Shown: piece after piece, positions 1 through 8,900 of the stretch | Layout: each line of letters begins with the position of its first letter | How positions within the stretch are numbered: position 1 is the first letter of the stretch | Origin: Macrostomum hystrix | Taxonomy: Eukaryota > Animalia > Platyhelminthes | Length of the DNA: 64,000 bases | Direction of reading: 5' to 3' | NCBI GenBank assembly: GCA_950097015.1 | Contig: CATNEN010000012.1 | Location: 2,728,001 to 2,792,000 of the forward strand | The notes under the pieces: generated by a model | What the model saw: only the letters and a program-made list of their open reading frames with translations | Databases searched by the model: none | What the model was told of the DNA's origin: nothing | Position numbers and translations under genes: made by a program

Positions 1-2
1 TG

Positions 3-818
3 GACCAGAGGATCGCCAGACAAGAGAAGCTGCTCCGCCTGAGAACGCTTCAGCGCCAAACAGCGGAGATTGAAGCCGAGCTTGGAAAGGACGGCCAGCG
101 CAGACAGAGTGGTAAGTCGACTAGCCCGATGCTGCTTAACCAAACCCTCAGTGCCCACGAGCCGGAGCAGCATCTGCCAGTGCCAGACTGGGAACTCCCC
201 GGCAGCTACACTAAGCCAGCTGCCACCTCGAGGCCTCTGCTGGTGAGAGACTTCATCGATCGTGACTTCGAGGAGCCTGCGCCCCAATTAGCGAAGACTA
301 GAGCCCGAACTGAGAACATCACGGCCGGTCAGTGGGTTGCAGGCAGCGGCCGCATCCTGCTGAGACTGCTTGACGACGGTGCCCTAGTCACAATGAGAAA
401 CGGCACCATGGATTTGAGTGAGCTGAAAGCCTATGTGCGGTACTGCGTACAGTTCGGCGAGTTCATGCATCAGGGCTTCAGCCAGGCCGCCCTCAACGAC
501 TACGACGAAGACTTCAGGATCCTGCAGCACCAGACCAGCGGCAACTGGGAGCGGGAGTCGTTGCAGCTGCTGTCCAAGCACATTCTGGCACCTAAACCCA
601 ATCCTGCTGGCAGTTCGACCTATTCGCGGCCTGGCTTCAAGTTCAGCAAAATGAGAAACCAGACAAGCGGCTTGGTCGGCCCAACCGACGCTGAAGGTCG
701 GGAGCTGTGCGTCAAATTCAACCGAAACAGCTGCCACAGACGCGACTGCAAGTTCAGACACGCGTGCTCTGCCTGCTACGCGGCGCACCCGCGCCAGCTC
801 TGCACGTCAAAAAACTAG
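3..818 (+). CDS. Gag-like ORF1 (5'-partial)
   Basis: The frame is open from base 3 (DQRIARQEKLLRLRTLQRQTAEIEAELG, coiled-coil-like), so the true start is outside the window. The C-terminal CVKFNRNSCHRRDCKFRHACSACYAAHPRQLC is C-x7-C-x4-C-x3-H plus C-x2-C-x3-H-x4-C zinc fingers, typical of DIRS/Ngaro Gag. Confidence 0.88.
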   Translation, partial: DQRIARQEKLLRLRTLQRQTAEIEAELGKDGQRRQSGKSTSPMLLNQTLSAHEPEQHLPVPDWELPGSYTKPAATSRPLLVRDFIDRDFEEPAPQLAKTRARTENITAGQWVAGSGRILLRLLDDGALVTMRNGTMDLSELKAYVRYCVQFGEFMHQGFSQAALNDYDEDFRILQHQTSGNWERESLQLLSKHILAPKPNPAGSSTYSRPGFKFSKMRNQTSGLVGPTDAEGRELCVKFNRNSCHRRDCKFRHACSACYAAHPRQLCTSKN

Positions 819-3292
819 ATTGCGGCCGGCCGGGGGACTTGACCGACGGCCCAGCTGCACCGGCCGATTCTGACAATGTCGATCACCCGCTCCCCCCTGG
901 CCGGCCTCAAGCTAAGCCCATCGAGTCCGTTGCCTTCTCTTCTGACCTTATCACCGCCGCCTGGGATGCCGAGCTGCTCGGCGATCCCGATCGTGACTTC
1001 CTGCTGAACGGTGTCCGCAACGGCTTCCGCCTCACCTGCCCCAGCGCCCCTGACAATCAGCCTAATAGCACTTTCTCTCAGAACTACTTCTCCGCTGACA
1101 GTAATCGGCTACTGGTCGAGCAGCAGGTGCGGGAAGAAGTGGCCAACGGCCGTTACGTGAAAGTTAGCAACAAGCCGGACGTCATCAGCGCCCTTGGTGC
1201 CATCCCGAAAGGAAACAACAAGATCCGGCTGATCCACGACTGCTCGCAACCTCCGGACCTCTCGCTGAACAGCCGTTTCTCCTCTGACTACCAGATCAAG
1301 TTTGAGACCGTCAGCCAGTTCACTGCCAAGCTGCAGCCAGGTTGGTTCATGGCGAAGGTCGACTTGGCCAATGCTTACCGCAGTGTCGGAATCAGTCCCC
1401 ACGACTTCCGCTACACTGGTCTACAGTGGAAGTTCAGCGATCAACCGAGCCCGACGTACCTGTGCGACACGCGCCTGCCATTCGGCGCGGCAGCTTCAGT
1501 GGAAGTCTTCCACCGCCTCAGCCAGTCCATCAAGCGCATGATGCAGCGACGCGGCTTCAGCAATATCGGGAGTTACCTCGATGACTTTGCCGTGGCGGCA
1601 GAAACTGAGATCGCCTGCCAGCAAGCTCTGGACACTCTACTTCATCTGCTGCGGCGTCTAGGCTTCTCCATCAACTGGAGCAAAGTAGCTCTGCCGTGCA
1701 CTAGGCTGGTGTACCTGGGCGTCATGATTGACACCAACAGCGGCCTGCTAGAGCTCCCAAAGGACAAGCTCGAGGTCACGAAAGCGCAGCTGCAATCCGC
1801 ACTCTCGCACAAGCGCATCACCAAGCGCCAGCTCCAATCTCTCTGTGGCCGCATCAACTGGGTTTGCCAGGTCGTCCATATCGGGAGGTGTTTCCTGAGG
1901 CCGCTCCTGCTGGAACTCAATAAGTTAAAGCAGCACTGCCACAAACTGCGCATGCACAACGATCTCCGCGAGACCATCCTCTGGTGGGTGGCCTGCCTGG
2001 CCAAGACCCCCAGCTGCCGCATCTGGAGGACCGCCGGGCCAGCCTGGGCAATCGAGTCGGACGCATCCAATTGGGGAGGCTGCGGCATCATCCGCGGCCC
2101 AGGCGTCACTAACTGGCTCATCATCGACTGGCAACGCGATAGTCCGGAGCTCGAAACTCTGCACATCAATTTTAAGGAGAGCCTCGCGCCCGTGTTCACG
2201 GCTCTGCACTTTCAACAAAAGCTGCAACCAGGAAGCAACCTGGTGATCTACTCGGACAGCACGGCCGCTGTCGGCGCCATCAACAAGGGCTCCTCGCCGA
2301 ACCCGATTGTCAACACAGCCCTGCAGCAGCTCGCGCTTCTCGCCGCTCACCGCGATCTCGTTATCCAAGCCTTCCACGTGCCTGGGACGTTCCAGATCTT
2401 TGCGGACAGCGGCAGTCGCGCAGATGACACCAGCGAGCTGGCAAATTTTCTGCTCCGGCTCTACGGCACAGTGGACATTGAAACTGACAACCTTCATGAG
2501 CACACCCTTTCGTCCGCCGCCCGCCAATTCCTTTCTTTGCAGATCGCTCGCCTACGGTCCCGGGTTCGCACCTCAGCCGCCGCTACCACGAGCTCTGCAG
2601 CCTGGCCTTCGCAGGCACGACAGCGCGCTCCTACCGCTGCCAGATTGCCTCCTGGCAACGCTTCTGTAAGCGAACGCGCATTGACAGCACCAGACCGTCA
2701 GCACAGCAGGTCGCGCACTACGTCATCGTGCTGGCCGACCGCCTCACATCGCATGCCAGCATTGGCGCATACCTTAACGCCGCCGACCTGTACTGCAAGC
2801 TGCAGACTGGCCGCGGCCTCCCAAGCGACCCTCGCATCGACCTGCTCCTCCGCGGCGTGCGACGCAAGCTGGCCAGGCCACCCGCGCGCAAGGCTCCAAT
2901 CAAGCCAAACCACCTGCTCAAAATGCGGGGAGTACTGCAGCTGCATATTCCGGAGGACGCAGCCTTCTGGGCGGCTGTCCTGGTCGGATTCTGGGGCCTG
3001 CTGCGCCGCGCAAACCTGTGCTGCCCGACCCCAATGCCGCCACCGGGAGAGGCCATCATCGTTGAAGACCTACGGCTGGGCTCGGACCTGGCAATCCTGC
3101 ATGTCCGCAAGTCCAAGACCAATCAGTTCCGTGAGCGAGTGCACCGCGTGGTCCTGCCACGCCTTCGACGCGAGGCGCAGCACCCGCTCTGTCCGGTGGC
3201 AGCGCTGCGACACCACCTGCACGCCAACCAGCCCGTCCCTGCTTCAGCCCATCTCTTCGCCTTCCGCCATTGCGGTGGTCTCGTGCCAATGA
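707..3292 (+). CDS. Pol ORF2: reverse transcriptase + RNase H (no ATG near its 5' end; probably reached by -1 frameshift)
   Basis: RT motifs KIRLIHDCS, MAKVDLANAYR, LPFGAAAS and YLDD (1574). RNase H motifs IESDASNWG, LHINFKES, IYSDSTAAVGAINKG and HVPGTFQIFADSGSR. No stops or frameshifts. Confidence 0.95.
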   Translation: MRQIQPKQLPQTRLQVQTRVLCLLRGAPAPALHVKKLDCGRPGDLTDGPAAPADSDNVDHPLPPGRPQAKPIESVAFSSDLITAAWDAELLGDPDRDFLLNGVRNGFRLTCPSAPDNQPNSTFSQNYFSADSNRLLVEQQVREEVANGRYVKVSNKPDVISALGAIPKGNNKIRLIHDCSQPPDLSLNSRFSSDYQIKFETVSQFTAKLQPGWFMAKVDLANAYRSVGISPHDFRYTGLQWKFSDQPSPTYLCDTRLPFGAAASVEVFHRLSQSIKRMMQRRGFSNIGSYLDDFAVAAETEIACQQALDTLLHLLRRLGFSINWSKVALPCTRLVYLGVMIDTNSGLLELPKDKLEVTKAQLQSALSHKRITKRQLQSLCGRINWVCQVVHIGRCFLRPLLLELNKLKQHCHKLRMHNDLRETILWWVACLAKTPSCRIWRTAGPAWAIESDASNWGGCGIIRGPGVTNWLIIDWQRDSPELETLHINFKESLAPVFTALHFQQKLQPGSNLVIYSDSTAAVGAINKGSSPNPIVNTALQQLALLAAHRDLVIQAFHVPGTFQIFADSGSRADDTSELANFLLRLYGTVDIETDNLHEHTLSSAARQFLSLQIARLRSRVRTSAAATTSSAAWPSQARQRAPTAARLPPGNASVSERALTAPDRQHSRSRTTSSCWPTASHRMPALAHTLTPPTCTASCRLAAASQATLASTCSSAACDASWPGHPRARLQSSQTTCSKCGEYCSCIFRRTQPSGRLSWSDSGACCAAQTCAARPQCRHRERPSSLKTYGWARTWQSCMSASPRPISSVSECTAWSCHAFDARRSTRSVRWQRCDTTCTPTSPSLLQPISSPSAIAVVSCQ

Positions 3293-3537
3293 CCGCCACC
3301 CGGTTCTGCCGCCTGTTTCGCCGCGCAGTCAACCTCGCCGGCCTGGGAGGACTATCGCTCTCACCGCACAGCCTCCGTCGCGGTGGTGCCTCCCTAGCCT
3401 TTCGGGAAGGCATCCCGCTGCCCGTCGTCAAGGCGCTGGGAGACTGGCGGAGTTCGGCGGTGGAGGCGTACCTTGGGTTGGAGTCGGGCCTCGACCTGCA
3501 ACTGGCTGCTGCTCAAAAACTATCAGCGTGCGTTTGA
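2500..3537 (+). CDS. Tyrosine recombinase ORF3
   Basis: The frame is open from 2500 and includes a SAM-like N-terminal domain (LAFAGTTARSYRCQIASWQRFC) upstream of the ORF-track start. Catalytic residues are intact: R (GLLRRANL), K (RKSKTNQ), HxxR (PHSLRRGGA), W (LGDWRS) and Y (AVEAYL). Confidence 0.95.
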   Translation, partial: AHPFVRRPPIPFFADRSPTVPGSHLSRRYHELCSLAFAGTTARSYRCQIASWQRFCKRTRIDSTRPSAQQVAHYVIVLADRLTSHASIGAYLNAADLYCKLQTGRGLPSDPRIDLLLRGVRRKLARPPARKAPIKPNHLLKMRGVLQLHIPEDAAFWAAVLVGFWGLLRRANLCCPTPMPPPGEAIIVEDLRLGSDLAILHVRKSKTNQFRERVHRVVLPRLRREAQHPLCPVAALRHHLHANQPVPASAHLFAFRHCGGLVPMTATRFCRLFRRAVNLAGLGGLSLSPHSLRRGGASLAFREGIPLPVVKALGDWRSSAVEAYLGLESGLDLQLAAAQKLSACV

Positions 3538-3802
3538 CCCTTGATCTGTCGCTCAAGCATTCTTTGTGACCTCTTTCTTTTGTACTCGCTGTGGACCAAG
3601 TGCCGGCGGCTTCTGTCTTCTGTATTTTTTTGCTTCACGTTTAGTTGTTGTGCTGCGCTCGCTGGTCTCGCTTGTAACTTCTTTACGCCTTCAACCATTT
3701 TGTGTTTTATGTTTTAGCTCTGTTTTAAGTGCGTACCGGCGTCACCCTATTTTGCATTTTATGTTGCGTGCCTCCCCCCTTCCTCTTCCTTTTTTTTGGG
3801 TT

Positions 3803-4239
3803 TGGGCCATAGACGGTGCCCTTCCCTCGTTCGCTCTCTGCTGTGTCGCATCTGCTGTCTCTGTCTGCCTTCGTGCCTGGGAGTGTGGTGTTTAGTGTCC
3901 AATCGGCGCTCGCTGATTGGGTGTAAACACCCACCCCAGGCACCCACCCCAGGCACCCACCCCTCCGCTTTTAGCTGGGTTGTATTTCAGCCGGCACCCC
4001 CGTGCTGCCCAGCCTTGTCTCTTCGCGCTGCGTGGTGTGAAATTTTTTTCTTTTTCCTTGCTTCCTTTTTTCTTTCTTGCTTTTGCCTTTTTGTGTGCAT
4101 TTTGAATACTTCCTTTGAAATAATTTATTTGCAAATATATCGTATGTGGGCCATAGACGGTGCCCTTCCCTCGTTCGCTCTCTGCTGTGTCGCATCTGCT
4201 GTCTCTGTCTGCCTTCGTGCCTGGGAGTGTGGTGTTTAG
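3803..4239 (+). repeat. Split direct repeats B1 (3803-3895), putative A2 (from 3896) and B2 (4147-4239)
   Basis: Two identical 93-bp copies, TGGGCCATAGACGG...GGTGTTTAG, with 251 bp between them. AT-rich host DNA follows 4239. Confidence 0.9.
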
Positions 4240-5376
4240 ATCGCAGTAGAAATGCTTAGATATCAACTAAAAAGGCTACGTTCTTGCATTTGCGGAGGTA
4301 ATATTTTACGTCTAGCACAGTAAAACCAATTCTGACAATATTATTACTAATTTACTTTTCTCAATGTACCGTTTTATTTGATGCTTTTTAAAATTTACAT
4401 TTGAATAAAATTGTTGTGTAAAAAGCAAAATCACAATGATTTTCTTTTTACTCCAAGGTAATCACTACGGTAACTGACTTTTCCGAGAAAATATTCAGTG
4501 TCAATAATTTTGTCATTTATTATCGGCGCGAAATACAGATCATATGCTTCACACCGTTATTTGAATTATTTAGTGCGAGGAATTTCATAAAATCGAGTTC
4601 TGAAACATCATGGAATAACTTTTAGACTTCAGCTATTTATAGGTTTATGTCTCTTTAAACGTTTTATCATTATTTATATTTTACTTTGCATAGCTCTTAG
4701 AATTTGTCCCTAAGAACTGTTAAAGTTAGTTAACTTTGTGCAAATATATGTTTAACATTATTTAAAATATAACAATATTTTTCTGTTTTCTTGCTTAAGA
4801 AGACATCGACTCACTAATTCATTGACTAGTTTTTAATAGTATTTTAAGCATTTCAACTATGTTAAAAGAGATCGTCTATTTTAGATTTTGAGTACTACTG
4901 CATAGTTTTGTTCTGATCTCTTAGTAAAAATTGTAGATGTGTAGTCATAGTAAAATAGTCATTTTGTGACTTTTTCGTACTATACTAGCTGCGAAAGTCT
5001 TAAATAACTATGCAAGCGCTAAAAAGCAAAGGGTTTTTAAAAATTTTTTGTTGATTTTCACATTTTTTACTTTTACTGCATATAAGCTGACAATATTTTG
5101 TTAATCGTTTGTTCTTGTTGTTAACAAACCAAAGTTAGAAAGTTGAAGTCATTGAAAATGAATTTACACTTTTTGTTGTCTAGCTTTTAGTTCAGTAATC
5201 AACAACAGAACTTACTATAACTAAGACTAGTCGACCTATTTAAGATATCTGTGCACAACTATTGGACTAAGTGTTTGTATCGCTTTAAATAAAAACTCAA
5301 ACAACTGAGACAAATGCAAACACTTGACATTAAAACAATGTTCTATTGCATTCCAGCAAATACCCTATTTGAAGCC

Positions 5377-5906
5377 ATGGCAGTGCCCTTCAGCAACACA
5401 AAACTGCGCGTTCCCCGCGGTTTCCAGTCCCTCCTAGAGGGCTTAGCTCGGGAGGTCCTCCGCTCGCAGCCGGCCGACATCTACACATTCGGCGCCATGT
5501 ACTTTGAGGAGCTGGTTAGACGCCGGGAAGAAACCGGCGACGACGATCCTGCACAGCTGGCAGCCAAGGTTGAGGATCGTTTCTACAACAACACGGCCTT
5601 CCAGCAGCCCACCATCGATCCGTCCGATCCACAGCAGCAGGACGCGTCCAAGGTCATCCAGACTAACTTCAGGCGACACGCGGCGCAGAAGGAGGCAGCC
5701 AAGCTGCGCGAGGACAAAGCCGCCAGCGAGATTCAGTCCGCCGTACGCGGCCACCAGGAGCGCGAGGCCATCAAGTGAGCTGCCAGACTGCCTGCCACCT
5801 GCCCGTCTGCCTGCCTGCCTGCCTGCCTGCCTGCCCGTCTGTCTGCCTGCCTGCCTGCCTGCCTGTCTGCCTGTCTGCCTGCCTGCCTGTCTGTCTGTCT
5901 GTCTGT

Positions 5907-5943
<37 letters not shown>

Positions 5944-8900
5944 TGCCTGCCTGCCTGTCTGTCTGTCTGTCTGTCTGCCTGCCTGCCTGCCTGTCTGCCT
6001 GTCTGTCTGTCTGTCTGTCGGTCATAGTGTCTGTCTGTCTGTCAGACTGTCTATCTGTGTCCGTGTCTGTATGTTATCCAGTCTATCTGTCTGTATTGTG
6101 AAATATTGAGTGCCCGGTTGTGAAGTCTCGATTCTTATTGTTAGATTTATTGCTTTCAATTTTTTAAAGCTTCTTGAATGATAACCCCCGGGATTATGAC
6201 TTGCTTCTTATTCTTGTGATCAGAGAGAAGCATCAACGACAGGACGGCAGAGAGAGAGAGAGGCGGACAGGGCAAGAAAGTGCAAGCCAGATTAAGACAG
6301 ATTTGAGCTTACGAGATTAACCGGAGGCCAATGCGTCCTCGTACCCTCTCCTCCTCATTCAGCCGCTGTCTTAACTCTCTCCCCGTCTCGTCTCCCCATC
6401 GATCTAACACAGCAGAAAGCATTCAGTGACTCCCCTCCCCGCCAAGCCAGAGCAGATATTTCCCATTATTGATTGATATCGAGGGAGCAATTTTCTCAAC
6501 TTGCTTGCTCTCTCTCTTTCTTCCCCACTCTCTCTCTCTCTGATGCATTTCTACAATATCCACATCTATCTGCACGGTTGGCATCAAAACTAGACGCTTT
6601 GAAAGGATGGTTATGAAATCGAAATATTCCTATCGATAATATTTTATACCCAAAAGTACACAGCTTTATTATTTTTAACAAAAATTAGTTTTCTAATTTA
6701 GCTCGTATGACTAAAGTTGATTATGTTTCTGTTTCAGGCACACGGCTCCGGGACAGAATTCTGCGGAGGAGGTGGTGAGTGTAATAAGTTTTGCACTCTG
6801 CCTGCTTCAACATCCGTACGTGCCTAGATTCTGAACACCCTAGATTAAAAAATCCCTAGATTCCCAAAATCCCTGTCTTCCAAAATCCCTGTCTTCCAAG
6901 ATCCCTGGATTCCCACAATCCCTGTCTTCCAAAATCCCTGTCTTCAAAAATCCCTGTCTTCCAAAATCCCTGTCTTCCAAGATCCCTGTCTTCCAAAATC
7001 CCTGTCTTCCAAAATCCCTGTCTTCCAAAATCCCTGTCTTCCAAAATCCCTGTCTTCCAAGATCTTAGATCCAAGATCCAAGATCTTCTTAAATCCCTAA
7101 ATTCCTTAAATCCCTAGATTCCTTAAATCCCTAGATTCCTTAAATCCCTAGATTCCTTAAATCCCTAGATTCCTTAAATCCCTAGATTCCTTAAATCCCT
7201 AGATTTCAAAGCTCCTAGATTCCGAAAATCTTTCGATTTCAAAGTCAACAATATTTCAGGAAGTCTTAATATTCCCTGAAGTGTCCAGATTCCCTGAAGT
7301 ATCCAGATTCCCTGAAGTCTCCAGATTCCCTGAAGTGTCCAGATTCCCTGAAGTGTCCAGATTCCCTGAAGTGTCCAGATTCCCTGAAGTGTCCAGATTC
7401 CCTGAAGTGTCCAGATTCCCTGAAGTGTCCAGATTCCCTGAAGTGTCCTCATTCCCTGAAGTGTCCTCATTCCCTGAAGTGTACTCATTCCCTGAAGTGT
7501 CCTCATTCCCTGAAGTGTCCTCATTCCCTGAAGTGTCCTCATTCCCTGAAGTGTACTCATTCCCTGAAGTGTCCTCATTCCCTGAAGTGTCCTCATTCCC
7601 TGAAGTGTCCTCATTCCCTGAAGTGTACTCATTACCTGAAGTGTACTCATTACCTGAAGTGTACTCATTCCCTGAAGTGTACTCATTCCCTGAAGTGTCC
7701 TCATTCTCTGAAGTTTACTCATTCCCTGAAGTGTACTCATTCCCTGAAGTGTACTCATTCCCTGAAGTATCCAGATTCCCTGAAGTGTCCTCATTCCCTG
7801 AAGTGTCCTGATTCCCTGAAGTGTACTCATTCCCTGAAGTGTCCAGATTCCCTGAAGTGTCCTCATTCCCTGAAGTGTACTCATTCCCTGAAGTGTACTC
7901 ATTCCCTGAAGTGTACTCATTCCCTGAAGTGTACTCATTCCCTGAAGTGTCCTCATTCCCTAAAGTTTACTCATTCCCTGAAGTGTACTCATTCCCTGAA
8001 GTGTACTCATTCCCTGAAGTATCCAGATTCCCTGAAGTGTCCAGATTCCCTGAAGTGTCCTCATTCCCTGAAGTGTCCAGATTCCCTGAAGTGTCCAGAT
8101 TCCCTGAAGTGTCCAGATTCCCTGAAGTGTCCAGATTCCCTGAAGTGTCCAGATTCCCTGAAGTGTCCTCATTCCCTGAAGTGTACTCATTCCCTGAAGT
8201 GTACTCATTCCCTGAAGTGTACTCATTCCCTGAAGTTTACTCATTCCCTGAAGTGTACTCATTCCCTGAAGTGTCCTCATTCCCTGAAGTGTACTCATTC
8301 CCTGAAGTGTCCTCATTCCCTGAAGTGTCCTCATTCCCTGAAGTGTACTCATTCCCTGAAGTGTCCTCATTCCCTGAAGTTTACTCATTCCCTGAAGTGT
8401 ACTCATTCCCTGAAGTGTACTCATTCCCTGAAGTGTCCTCATTCCCTGAAGTGTACTCATTCCCTGAAGTGTCCTCATTCCCTGAAGTTTACTCATTCCC
8501 TGAAGTGTCCTCATTCCCTGAAGTGTACTCATTCCCTGATGTGTCCTCATTCCCTGAAGTGTACTCATTCCCTGAAGTGTCCTCATTCCCTGAAGTGTAC
8601 TCATTCCCTGAAGTGTACTCATTCCCTGAAGTGTACTCATTCCCTGAAGCGTCCTGATTCCCTGAAGTGTCCTCATTCCCTGAAGTGTCCTGATTTCCTG
8701 AAGTGTCCAGATTCCCTGAAGTGTACACATTCCCTGAAGTGTCCTGATTCCCTGAAGTGTCCAGATTCCCTGAAGTGTCTTGATTCCCTGAAGTGTCCAG
8801 ATTCCCTGAAGTGTCCTGATTCCCTGAAGTGTCCAGATTCCCTGCAGTTTCAAGATCCCAAAATGCCATTTATTTCCGTCATCTTCCTCAAGGATATTGA

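What the first reader, a model, noticed from the sequence alone, without database searches (positions are those of the whole stretch)
112..2542. Hidden intron that would fuse the Gag N-terminus in frame to the ATG-less tyrosine recombinase
Seen: the YR frame is open from 2500 but has no ATG before its SAM-like domain. Just upstream is a textbook acceptor (CCAATTCCTTTCTTTGCAG|AT, AG at 2541-42) with a CTGAC branch-like motif at ~2484. Inside gag is a perfect donor (AGTG|GTAAGT, 112-117). Both sites are phase 1, so removing 112-2542 gives G+AT = Asp and the fusion ...GQRRQS-D-RSPTVPGSHLSRRYHELCSLAFAG... Inference: the element makes its integrase from a spliced subgenomic mRNA that skips RT/RNase H. 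The Gag coiled-coil leader could act as a tether that loads the recombinase into the particle. Splicing to set protein ratios is established for copia-type elements; I cannot confirm whether it has been shown for Ngaro YR.
Basis: partly seen in the sequence, partly recalled or inferred. Interest (0 to 1): 0.85.

Follow-up and report, generated by a model that had tools for sequence, protein, structure and literature searches.

The report
Spliced gag-recombinase message of a Ngaro retrotransposon
A flatworm retrotransposon very probably makes its recombinase from a spliced message that joins the first third of its Gag protein (a DNA-binding SAP domain plus a coiled coil) in frame to a recombinase reading frame that has no start codon, and the same design recurs in molluscs and a hemichordate.

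Summary
GTG|GTAAGT lies at 112-117 and a pyrimidine tract plus CAG ends at 2542. Both sites are phase 1. The recombinase (YR) frame opens at 2500 and has no ATG before 2923.

The host is Macrostomum hystrix.
- At least eight Ngaro families in the genome have an ATG-less YR frame behind a pyrimidine-tract/CAG acceptor, phase 1 in all but one locus.
- Three M. hystrix families and one M. lignano element also have a consensus phase-1 donor just after the Gag coiled coil.
- One sister family has a complete 2.08-kb genomic copy that lacks exactly the GT..AG interval. It carries an intact 446-aa SAP/coiled-coil/YR frame.
- RefSeq gene models in Glandiceps, Patella and Saccostrea join the Gag N-terminus to the YR across gag-C/RT/RNase H, all in phase 1.
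- No productive frameshift site exists, and the flatworm spliced-leader AUG would be out of frame.

New here: in all four Macrostomum families a 43-46-bp RNA duplex pairs an exon-1 linker with the acceptor and the start of exon 2.

First readers noted the same splice idea on other DNA of this genome, and none of those notes carries a follow-up. I found no description of it in the papers searched.

The parts
1..4239 (+). Ngaro-type tyrosine-recombinase retrotransposon, cut at the window edge. The whole element is L001:1076-5739 (4,664 bp), which is window -424..4239.
   Evidence: Split direct repeats A1...B1-A2-B2. SAP, RVT_1 and Phage_integrase Pfam hits. About ten near-full copies at 95-100% identity in the genome.
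1..111 (+). 3' end of proposed exon 1. The full coding exon 1 is L001:1242-1611, 123 codons plus 1 nt, encoding SAP domain, acidic/Gly linker and coiled coil.
   Evidence: SAP at aa 7-38, E 1e-6.
112..117 (+). 5' splice site GTAAGT, phase 1, splitting a Gly codon as G|GT.
   Evidence: It is the only GTRAGT in the element. It is kept in all 16 copies that cover it, including the locus copies that diverge by about 9-10% around it. Donors lie in the homologous region and phase in families S, T and Mlig.
112..2542 (+). Proposed 2,431-nt intron. It holds the rest of gag with its zinc knuckle, the -1 frameshift site and RT/RNase H.
   Evidence: Equivalent introns measure 2,404 nt (S), 2,383 nt (T), 2,542 nt (M. 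lignano), 3,291 nt (Glandiceps), 2,248 nt (Patella) and 2,118 nt (Saccostrea).
809..815 (+). Slippery heptamer A_AAA_AAC in the gag frame, immediately before the gag stop TAG at 816-818. The pol frame is -1 relative to gag.
   Evidence: with frames. The downstream MFE fold is no better than shuffled sequence (z 0.13), and a pseudoknot was not tested.
839..2499 (+). RT/RNase H coding part of pol, in window frame 2. That frame stays open to 3292.
   Evidence: RVT_1 E 9e-15, ORF 707-3292. The length of the pol tail past the acceptor varies from 26 to 750 nt among families.
2484..2488 (+). Branch-point-like CTGAC, 54-58 nt before the AG.
   Evidence: Sequence motif only, not tested.
2520..2542 (+). 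Pyrimidine tract plus CAG 3' splice site, phase 1.
   Evidence: The same arrangement occurs in at least eight families. One truncated, diverged copy (L011) has AG changed to TG.
2529..2585 (+). 3' arm of a long-range RNA duplex, from -14 to +42 around the exon 2 start. Its partner is L001:1444-1493 (window -56..-7), 119-168 nt upstream of the donor.
   Evidence: 44 pairs, -71.9 kcal/mol. Rank 1 of 814 windows. The reciprocal best partner has z about -7.
2543..3537 (+). Proposed exon 2: tyrosine recombinase (core-binding/SAM-like domain plus catalytic domain) with no start codon of its own. Stop at 3535-3537.
   Evidence: The alignment keeps R169, K206, H290, R293, W316 and Y324.
3803..4239 (+). 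3' repeat block: B1 3803-3895, A2 3891-4048, B2 4147-4239. It is retained in the spliced RNA, as is A1.
   Evidence: L001 coordinates minus 1500.

Best explanation
The element is an intact Ngaro retrotransposon of Macrostomum hystrix that uses three expression routes. The unspliced RNA gives Gag. A -1 frameshift at A_AAA_AAC (809-815) gives Gag-Pol (RT/RNase H). Removal of a 2,431-nt GT-AG intron (112-2542) gives a subgenomic mRNA. On that mRNA the Gag start codon and the first 123 codons (SAP DNA-binding motif, linker, coiled coil) are read in frame into the start-less recombinase ORF, giving a protein of about 455 aa. Shown here: the signals, their matching phase, their conservation across distant families and phyla, and a genomic retrocopy of the spliced form in a sister family. 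Inferred: that the window's own family is spliced in vivo; that only a fraction of transcripts is spliced; that the leader gives the recombinase DNA tethering, oligomerisation or co-assembly with Gag; and that the 43-46-bp duplex between exon 1 and the 3' splice site tunes or protects this splice.
For: (1) Sites and phase were verified. (2) In 18 further loci from at least eight other families (YR 33-42% identical), the YR frame has no Met before the SAM-like domain and is preceded by a 14-18/20 pyrimidine tract plus CAG. It is phase 1 in all but L042. In L057 and L059 a TAA closes the YR frame only 7 nt before the AG, yet the 330-aa ORF is intact. (3) Phase-1 donors splitting a Gly codon right after the coiled coil are present in all four Macrostomum families whose gag could be read: W GTG|GTAAGT, S AAG|GTGAGC, T GGG|GTGAGT and M. 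lignano GCG|GTAAGC. Gag N-termini are only about 25% identical. (4) L056 (contig C1) is a 2,083-bp element with A1, B1, A2 and B2 repeats, inserted in a 21-bp satellite. It is 99.5-99.8% identical to the full-length S copy but lacks exactly GTGAGC...CACAG. It has an open 446-aa frame with SAP and SAM-like Pfam hits and a YR catalytic motif. (5) UniRef100_A0A1I8J2F9 (M. lignano) spans the same junction...SSQ|GRSRAPHR, at 66% identity. (6) RefSeq XP_077986280.1 (Glandiceps), XP_050388701.2 (Patella) and XP_062601811.1 (Saccostrea) are two-exon models. In each, exon 1 is the N-terminus of a gag ORF that reads on through the donor, the intron holds the gag zinc knuckle and RT/RH, exon 2 is the YR, the intron is GT-AG and the phase is 1. 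(7) Exon 1 and the acceptor region co-evolve as a duplex in the four Macrostomum families. This ties the two distant sites together functionally.
Against: No RNA evidence exists for this organism. The only runs found were Logan contigs that look like DNA, and they cross both sites unspliced. No intron-less copy of the window's own family was found. The duplex covers the pyrimidine tract and the AG, which on its own should hinder rather than help acceptor use. Gnomon models can rest partly on homology or ab initio prediction, and I could not see their RNA support. Many YR relatives from metagenomes are called with a Met of their own near the equivalent position, so the strategy may not be universal, or those calls may start inside the intron, as P0068 does.
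Confidence: 0.85

Rival explanations
1. The recombinase is made from unspliced RNA by a second -1 ribosomal frameshift (pol frame into YR frame), or by termination-reinitiation, as usually assumed for overlapping DIRS/Ngaro ORFs.
For: The YR frame is -1 relative to pol in most families and the two frames overlap. [quoted passage not shown] In one family (L047) pol and YR are in the same frame, so read-through is possible there.
Against: The only X_XXY_YYZ site in the pol frame near the junction (A_AAT_TTT, 2443) shifts into a frame with stops before 2500. The usable overlap is 43 nt here and 7 nt in L057/L059, and it consists of the pyrimidine tract. The constant frame relation follows from the intron being coding throughout, so its length modulo 3 is frozen. 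This rival does not explain the donors, the L056 copy or the two-exon RefSeq models.
Confidence: 0.04
2. The acceptor at 2542 is used for spliced-leader trans-splicing, and the leader's terminal AUG starts the recombinase.
For: About 30% of M. lignano genes are SL trans-spliced and the 35-nt leader ends in ...TTGCATG (PMC8629364). A strong acceptor far from its donor is a plausible SL target.
Against: The acceptor is phase 1 in every family but one locus. A leader AUG placed directly before 2543 reads the pol frame (an open but meaningless 250-codon frame), not the YR frame. The leader has no in-frame ATG for phase 1 (reasoned). The same phase-1 design occurs in the mollusc and hemichordate elements, and L056 carries gag exon 1, not a leader. 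The M. hystrix leader itself was not examined.
Confidence: 0.03
3. The motifs in this family are inert. The L056-type copy arose by DNA or reverse-transcriptase deletion between the 4-nt microhomology AGGT found at both ends, not by splicing.
For: AAG|GT and CAG|GT share AGGT, so a template switch could give the same product. Internally deleted non-autonomous copies are common in this genome.
Against: The other deletion derivatives do not end at splice consensus sequences. L056's ends coincide with GTGAGC and a pyrimidine-tract CAG and preserve the reading frame. A jump across the exon1/exon2 duplex would remove both arms, but L056 keeps both. The same junction appears in a 66%-identical M. 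lignano protein and in three RefSeq models.
Confidence: 0.05

Closest known systems
Avian sarcoma/leukosis virus env mRNA (my own knowledge, not tested here)
   Same: The splice donor lies inside gag downstream of the gag AUG. The downstream ORF therefore has no start of its own and borrows gag's start codon and first codons.
   Different: There only 6 gag codons are borrowed. Here 115-171 codons are borrowed, carrying folded modules (SAP, coiled coil), and the downstream product is the integration enzyme, not an envelope protein.
Foamy virus Pol and Drosophila copia Gag, both made from spliced subgenomic mRNAs; the Ogre plant retrotransposon intron (my own knowledge)
   Same: Splicing, rather than frameshifting, sets which retroelement protein is made and in what amount. 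Unspliced RNA must persist as the template.
   Different: These are LTR elements or retroviruses with DDE integrases. No Gag-enzyme fusion is created in foamy virus, and copia splicing removes pol to make more Gag.
Ngaro / DIRS-order tyrosine-recombinase retrotransposons as described (PMC4157794, PMC3783388, PMC7192593)
   Same: Gag, RT/RNase H and YR, with split direct repeats A1-B1A2-B2 and no methyltransferase. The YR ORF is out of frame with or overlaps pol.
   Different: The papers I could search say only that the YR ORF may be frameshifted or overlapping. None mentions a natural intron, a Gag-YR fusion, a SAP domain on the recombinase or a long-range duplex.
RefSeq 'integrase/recombinase xerD homolog' gene models (XP_077986280.1, XP_050388701.2, XP_062601811.1)
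   Same: Identical exon design: gag N-terminus, a phase-1 GT-AG intron holding gag-C plus RT/RH, then the YR.
   Different: They are annotated as host genes, not as products of a retrotransposon. The leaders lack a detectable SAP domain, and the Glandiceps and Patella elements lack the exon1/acceptor duplex. Saccostrea was not tested for the duplex.

Membership tests
Ngaro (DIRS-order YR retrotransposon) | Encodes reverse transcriptase/RNase H and a tyrosine recombinase, with no DDE integrase or protease | tested here: met
   RVT_1 E 9e-15 and Phage_integrase E 3e-6, with no other Pfam families. The YR alignment keeps the R-K-H-R-W-Y positions. RNase H itself was not detected by Pfam and is inferred from position.
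Ngaro (DIRS-order YR retrotransposon) | Split direct repeats A1 ... B1-A2-B2 with the internal repeats downstream of the YR | tested here: met
   A1 L001:1076-1233 and A2 5391-5548 (99%); B1 5303-5395 and B2 5647-5739 (100%).
Ngaro (DIRS-order YR retrotransposon) | No methyltransferase domain, which distinguishes it from DIRS1/PAT | tested here: met
   Pol holds only RVT_1 and a weak RVT_thumb hit. It ends about 40 nt before the acceptor, leaving no room for a further domain.
Retroelement with a spliced subgenomic mRNA | Consensus 5' and 3' splice sites on the sense strand that join two ORFs in frame | tested here: met
   Conserved in position and phase in seven families of five species.
Retroelement with a spliced subgenomic mRNA | The spliced RNA exists in vivo | tested here: inconclusive
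   No RNA run was available, and contigs of four runs show only the unspliced form. Indirect support comes from the exact intron-less retrocopy L056 in family S and from the protein and gene models in other species.
Retroelement with a spliced subgenomic mRNA | Spliced and unspliced RNAs coexist in a regulated ratio | not testable with these tools
   Needs quantitative RNA data.
Programmed -1 frameshift into the YR ORF | Slippery heptamer in the pol frame inside the open overlap with the YR frame | tested here: not met
   The only in-frame heptamer (2443) precedes three stops in the YR frame. There is none between 2500 and 2700.
SL trans-spliced mRNA using the leader's AUG | Acceptor in phase 0 relative to the ORF, so that the leader's terminal AUG is in frame | tested here: not met
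   The acceptor is phase 1. The leader sequence is from PMC8629364. It is the M. lignano leader, and the M. hystrix leader was not checked.

The most novel reading that the evidence does not exclude
Animal Ngaro retrotransposons in general express their recombinase as a Gag-leader fusion from a phase-1 spliced subgenomic mRNA. In Macrostomum an additional co-evolving 43-46-bp duplex between the exon-1 linker and the 3' splice site acts as an RNA switch. It would either set the spliced:unspliced ratio or shield this internal acceptor from spliced-leader trans-splicing, which would otherwise cut the genomic RNA. Because the spliced RNA keeps both repeat ends, it is itself retrotransposed and seeds recombinase-only elements such as L056.
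Probability: 0.4. Interest if true: 0.85.

Novelty: new variant of a known kind. Interest (0 to 1): 0.8.

Why it matters
How DIRS/Ngaro elements translate their recombinase has been left at 'the ORF may be frameshifted or overlap'. A conserved phase-1 intron that gives the recombinase Gag's start codon plus a DNA-binding and coiled-coil leader is a concrete, testable answer. It appears to hold from flatworms to molluscs and hemichordates.

It has three further consequences. It means that 'xerD-like integrase' genes in animal annotations can be retrotransposon products. It explains recombinase-only mini-elements as retrocopies of the spliced RNA. The co-evolving exon-1/acceptor duplex is a clean natural case of long-range RNA structure coupled to a splice site, in an animal with heavy trans-splicing.

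Tried and rejected
- RNA evidence. The look-up of sequencing runs listed six holders, none on record as RNA. Read laying on X1-X4 gave only Logan contigs that run into unique flanks, so they are probably DNA. They show no 1611|4043 joint in L001 coordinates and cross both sites unspliced. This is neither support nor refutation.
- Intron-less copy of the window's own family. None was found among the DNA or protein hits.
Donors could therefore be read in only three M. hystrix families.
- Complex prediction of the 123-aa leader as a homodimer gave no verdict (score 0.00). It is not evidence either way.
- RNA.duplexfold of the whole 5' parts against 140-nt acceptor regions gave uninterpretable whole-length duplexes. 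I replaced it with 40-nt sliding windows.
- MFE fold downstream of the gag slippery site was no better than shuffled sequence. A pseudoknot was not tested.
- A short pol-to-YR intron using the same acceptor was considered by eye. GT at 2471 keeps the pol frame and GT at 2415 is a poor donor, so I rejected it.
- P0067's contig is not on record, so I cannot tell whether that M. lignano protein comes from a spliced model or from an intron-less copy.
- Goodwin and Poulter 2004 (MBE) is not held in the library, so an earlier remark on this point cannot be excluded.

The exons were searched separately by reference, and the natural intron-less ORF of L056 was used by reference. For the three RefSeq models the exon borders were located inside a script by matching the public protein to its own two genomic exons, and nothing joined was sent to a search tool.
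Full report
WHAT IS THERE. The window is G000:C12:2728001-2792000. The genome has 220,453,370 bases in 42 contigs. That is exactly the Macrostomum hystrix assembly in Table 1 of PMC10468722, so the host is this free-living flatworm.

The finding lies in a 4,664-bp element, L001:1076-5739 (window -424..4239). It has the split direct repeats typical of Ngaro: A1, then B1-A2-B2.
- Gag starts at L001:1242 and carries an N-terminal SAP domain (Pfam E 1e-6), an acidic/Gly linker and a coiled coil. It ends with a zinc-knuckle-like motif at the TAG at 816-818.
- Pol (RVT_1, E 9e-15) is in the -1 frame. A_AAA_AAC lies at 809-815, directly before the gag stop.
- The recombinase frame is -1 relative to pol, opens at 2500 and ends at 3537.
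- About ten near-full copies exist, in one group about 99.5-100% identical and another about 95-96%, plus deleted derivatives.

GTG|GTAAGT lies at 112 and TTTCTTTGCAG|AT ends at 2542. CTGAC is at 2484-2488. Both sites are phase 1, and there is no ATG in the recombinase frame before 2923. GTRAGT occurs once in the element. One occurrence somewhere is about what base composition predicts, so the single element alone could not settle the matter.

COMPARATIVE TEST WITHIN THE GENOME. A six-frame search with exon 2 found at least eight further Ngaro families whose recombinases are 33-42% identical to this one.
- In 18 loci the recombinase frame again has no Met before its SAM-like domain. The frame upstream reads through a 14-18/20 pyrimidine tract ending in CAG.
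- Exon 2 starts two bases before the first full codon, which is phase 1, in all loci except L042. L042 has a short deletion there.
- In L057 and L059 a TAA closes the recombinase frame 7 nt before the AG although the 330-codon ORF is intact. Ribosomes therefore cannot enter from upstream in that frame.
- The pol stop lies 26 to 750 nt past the acceptor in different families. The long pol overhang in the window (to 3292) is therefore incidental.

- Family S (L062) has CACAAG|GTGAGC after codon 115 plus 1 nt.
- Family T (L030) has CCGGGG|GTGAGT in phase 1 just after its coiled coil.
- A M. lignano element reached through protein P0068 (L073) has CGCG|GTAAGC after codon 124 plus 1 nt, and a phase-1 acceptor 2,542 nt downstream.
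- These Gag N-termini are only about 25% identical. Each donor sits a few residues after the one invariant Arg at the end of the coiled coil and splits a Gly codon as G|GT.

A RETROCOPY OF THE SPLICED FORM. L056 (contig C1) and the full-length S copy on C39 (L062 plus L054) are 99.5-99.8% identical. L056 goes from ...CACCACAAG directly to GTCGCAGCC.... The full-length copy has AAG|GTGAGC ... 2,404 nt ... TTTCACAG|GTCGCAGCC.

L056 is a complete 2,083-bp element: A1 920-1088, ORF 1114-2454, B1, A2, B2 to 3002. It is inserted in a 21-bp satellite that continues on both sides. Its 446-codon frame is open. It carries SAP (E 1e-8) and SAM-like Pfam hits and the HSLRRGG...GDW recombinase motifs.

A 4-nt microhomology (AGGT) leaves a deletion formally possible. 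However, the ends are splice consensus sequences, the frame is kept, and both arms of the duplex described below are retained, which a jump across that stem would not do.

OTHER SPECIES. The natural L056 ORF finds UniRef100_A0A1I8J2F9 of M. lignano (66% identity), which runs through the same junction...SSQ|GRSRAPHR.

A full HMMER scan found longer recombinase proteins. Three of them are RefSeq models: Glandiceps talaboti XP_077986280.1, Patella vulgata XP_050388701.2 and Saccostrea cucullata XP_062601811.1. Their loci (L074, L075, L077) each show the following:
- Exon 1 (171, 124 and 121 codons, each plus 1 nt) is the start of a 334-383-aa gag ORF that reads on through the donor to a zinc knuckle.
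- A GT-AG intron of 3,291, 2,248 or 2,118 nt holds gag-C and RT/RNase H.
- Exon 2 is the recombinase.
- The intron is phase 1 every time.

The design is therefore shared by flatworms, a gastropod, a bivalve and a hemichordate. I could not see how much RNA evidence underlies these models.

RIVALS.
- A second -1 frameshift. The only heptamer in the pol frame (A_AAT_TTT at 2443) leads into stops, and none lies between 2500 and 2700.
- Spliced-leader trans-splicing. The M. lignano leader ends in ATG (PMC8629364). A phase-1 acceptor would put that ATG in the pol frame, not the recombinase frame.
- Own Met. Many metagenomic relatives are called with a Met near the equivalent position. At least one such call (P0068) starts inside the pyrimidine tract of the intron.

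A NEW FEATURE: A LONG-RANGE DUPLEX. A stray minus-strand hit led to this. In W, S, T and the M. lignano element, the 40-nt window at the acceptor is the best partner of exon 1 among 743-814 windows of the element, rank 1 each time with z about -4. Reciprocally, the acceptor window's best partner anywhere upstream starts 161-169 nt before the donor, with z about -6 to -7.

Each duplex has 43-46 pairs at -70 to -80 kcal/mol. It runs from about -15 in the pyrimidine tract to about +42 in exon 2. It pairs with the stretch encoding the poorly conserved linker between SAP and the coiled coil.

Each family's exon 1 pairs best with its own acceptor (diagonal of the matrix), so the arms co-evolve. The Glandiceps and Patella elements lack the duplex (ranks 207 and 41). 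That also serves as a negative control for the method.

What the duplex does is inference. Because it covers the tract and the AG, I think it most likely limits acceptor use, keeping most RNA full-length. Alternatively it may shield this internal acceptor from the abundant spliced-leader machinery while holding the cis exon nearby. A looping, splice-promoting role is also possible.

HOW IT PROBABLY WORKS. The unspliced RNA serves as template and as mRNA for Gag and, by frameshift, Gag-Pol. A spliced fraction gives SAP/coiled-coil/recombinase. The leader could tether the enzyme to DNA or chromatin through SAP. Through the coiled coil it shares with Gag, it could promote oligomerisation or co-assembly. 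Neither role was tested, and the one complex prediction gave no verdict. The spliced RNA keeps A1 and B1-A2-B2, which explains how L056 could be copied and inserted.

NOVELTY. Searches for Ngaro or DIRS combined with intron, splicing or subgenomic terms found no description of a natural intron or of a Gag-recombinase fusion. 'Spliced' in the DIRS-1 paper refers to an artificial marker intron. The founding Ngaro paper is not in the library. First readers of this scan noted the same idea on other pieces of this genome, and none of those notes carries a follow-up.

LIMITS. There are no RNA data. Donors were read in only three of the M. hystrix families. The window's family has no retrocopy.

Noticed in passing
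window 805-870: A_AAA_AAC at 809-815 lies directly before the gag stop (816-818), with pol in the -1 frame and a GC-rich stretch starting about 5 nt downstream. This is a likely gag-pol frameshift site. The simple MFE fold is no better than shuffled sequence.
   Followed up: partly
L056:347-919 and 3003-3848 (G000 contig C1, about 3.358-3.362 Mb): The intron-less element sits inside an array of a 21-bp satellite (unit CTACTCATTCCACTGTTAGAT) that continues on both sides.
   Followed up: partly
L062:1276-1503 and L054:2840-3067 (G000 contig C39, about 9.544-9.549 Mb): In the full-length S-family copy, 228 bp identical to its 5' flank follow the A2 repeat in place of a B2 repeat. This is an unusual 3' end or a local duplication.
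   Followed up: no
G000 contig C41, about 3.4016-3.4034 Mb and 3.4570-3.4587 Mb (L016-L018, L020, L022, L025, L028): These are diverged (85-91%) derivatives of the window's family with several internal deletions. In the 3.457 Mb copy one deletion removes the donor region (element 496-730) and another removes the acceptor (element 2865-2980). They look like non-autonomous relatives.
   Followed up: partly
window 2543-3292, frame 2: The pol frame stays open for 750 nt over the recombinase gene, reading as low-complexity S/T/A/R-rich text. Its length varies from 26 to 750 nt among families, so it is probably incidental.
   Followed up: partly
L076:3872-6600 (ENA assembly ERZ26168041): A contiguous 477-aa SAP-recombinase ORF (P0131) from an unknown organism is followed, not preceded, by RT-like fragments. 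It is either another intron-less form or a different gene order.
   Followed up: no
P0086 (UniRef100_A0A1I8G0Z6, M. lignano, 758 aa): This gene model holds SAP, further gag-like sequence and the first pol motif, then the recombinase. It could be a different deletion derivative or a mis-joined model.
   Followed up: no
L001:4764-5022 (window 3264-3522): Contigs of runs X3 and X4 carry a variant that skips 257 nt near the 3' end of the recombinase gene, with GCC inserted. Genome copies L013 and L015 have similar but not identical deletions.
   Followed up: no
window 5314-6110: A host ORF resembles sperm protein Sp17 (RIIa-like N-terminus plus an IQ-like motif) by eye. It is followed by a CTGCCTGCC-type repeat that is open in several frames.
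   Followed up: no
L047 (G000 contig C41, about 3.648-3.652 Mb): In this family pol and the recombinase are in one continuous 818-codon frame, yet the pyrimidine-tract/CAG acceptor is still present. Both read-through and splicing may be possible there.
   Followed up: no
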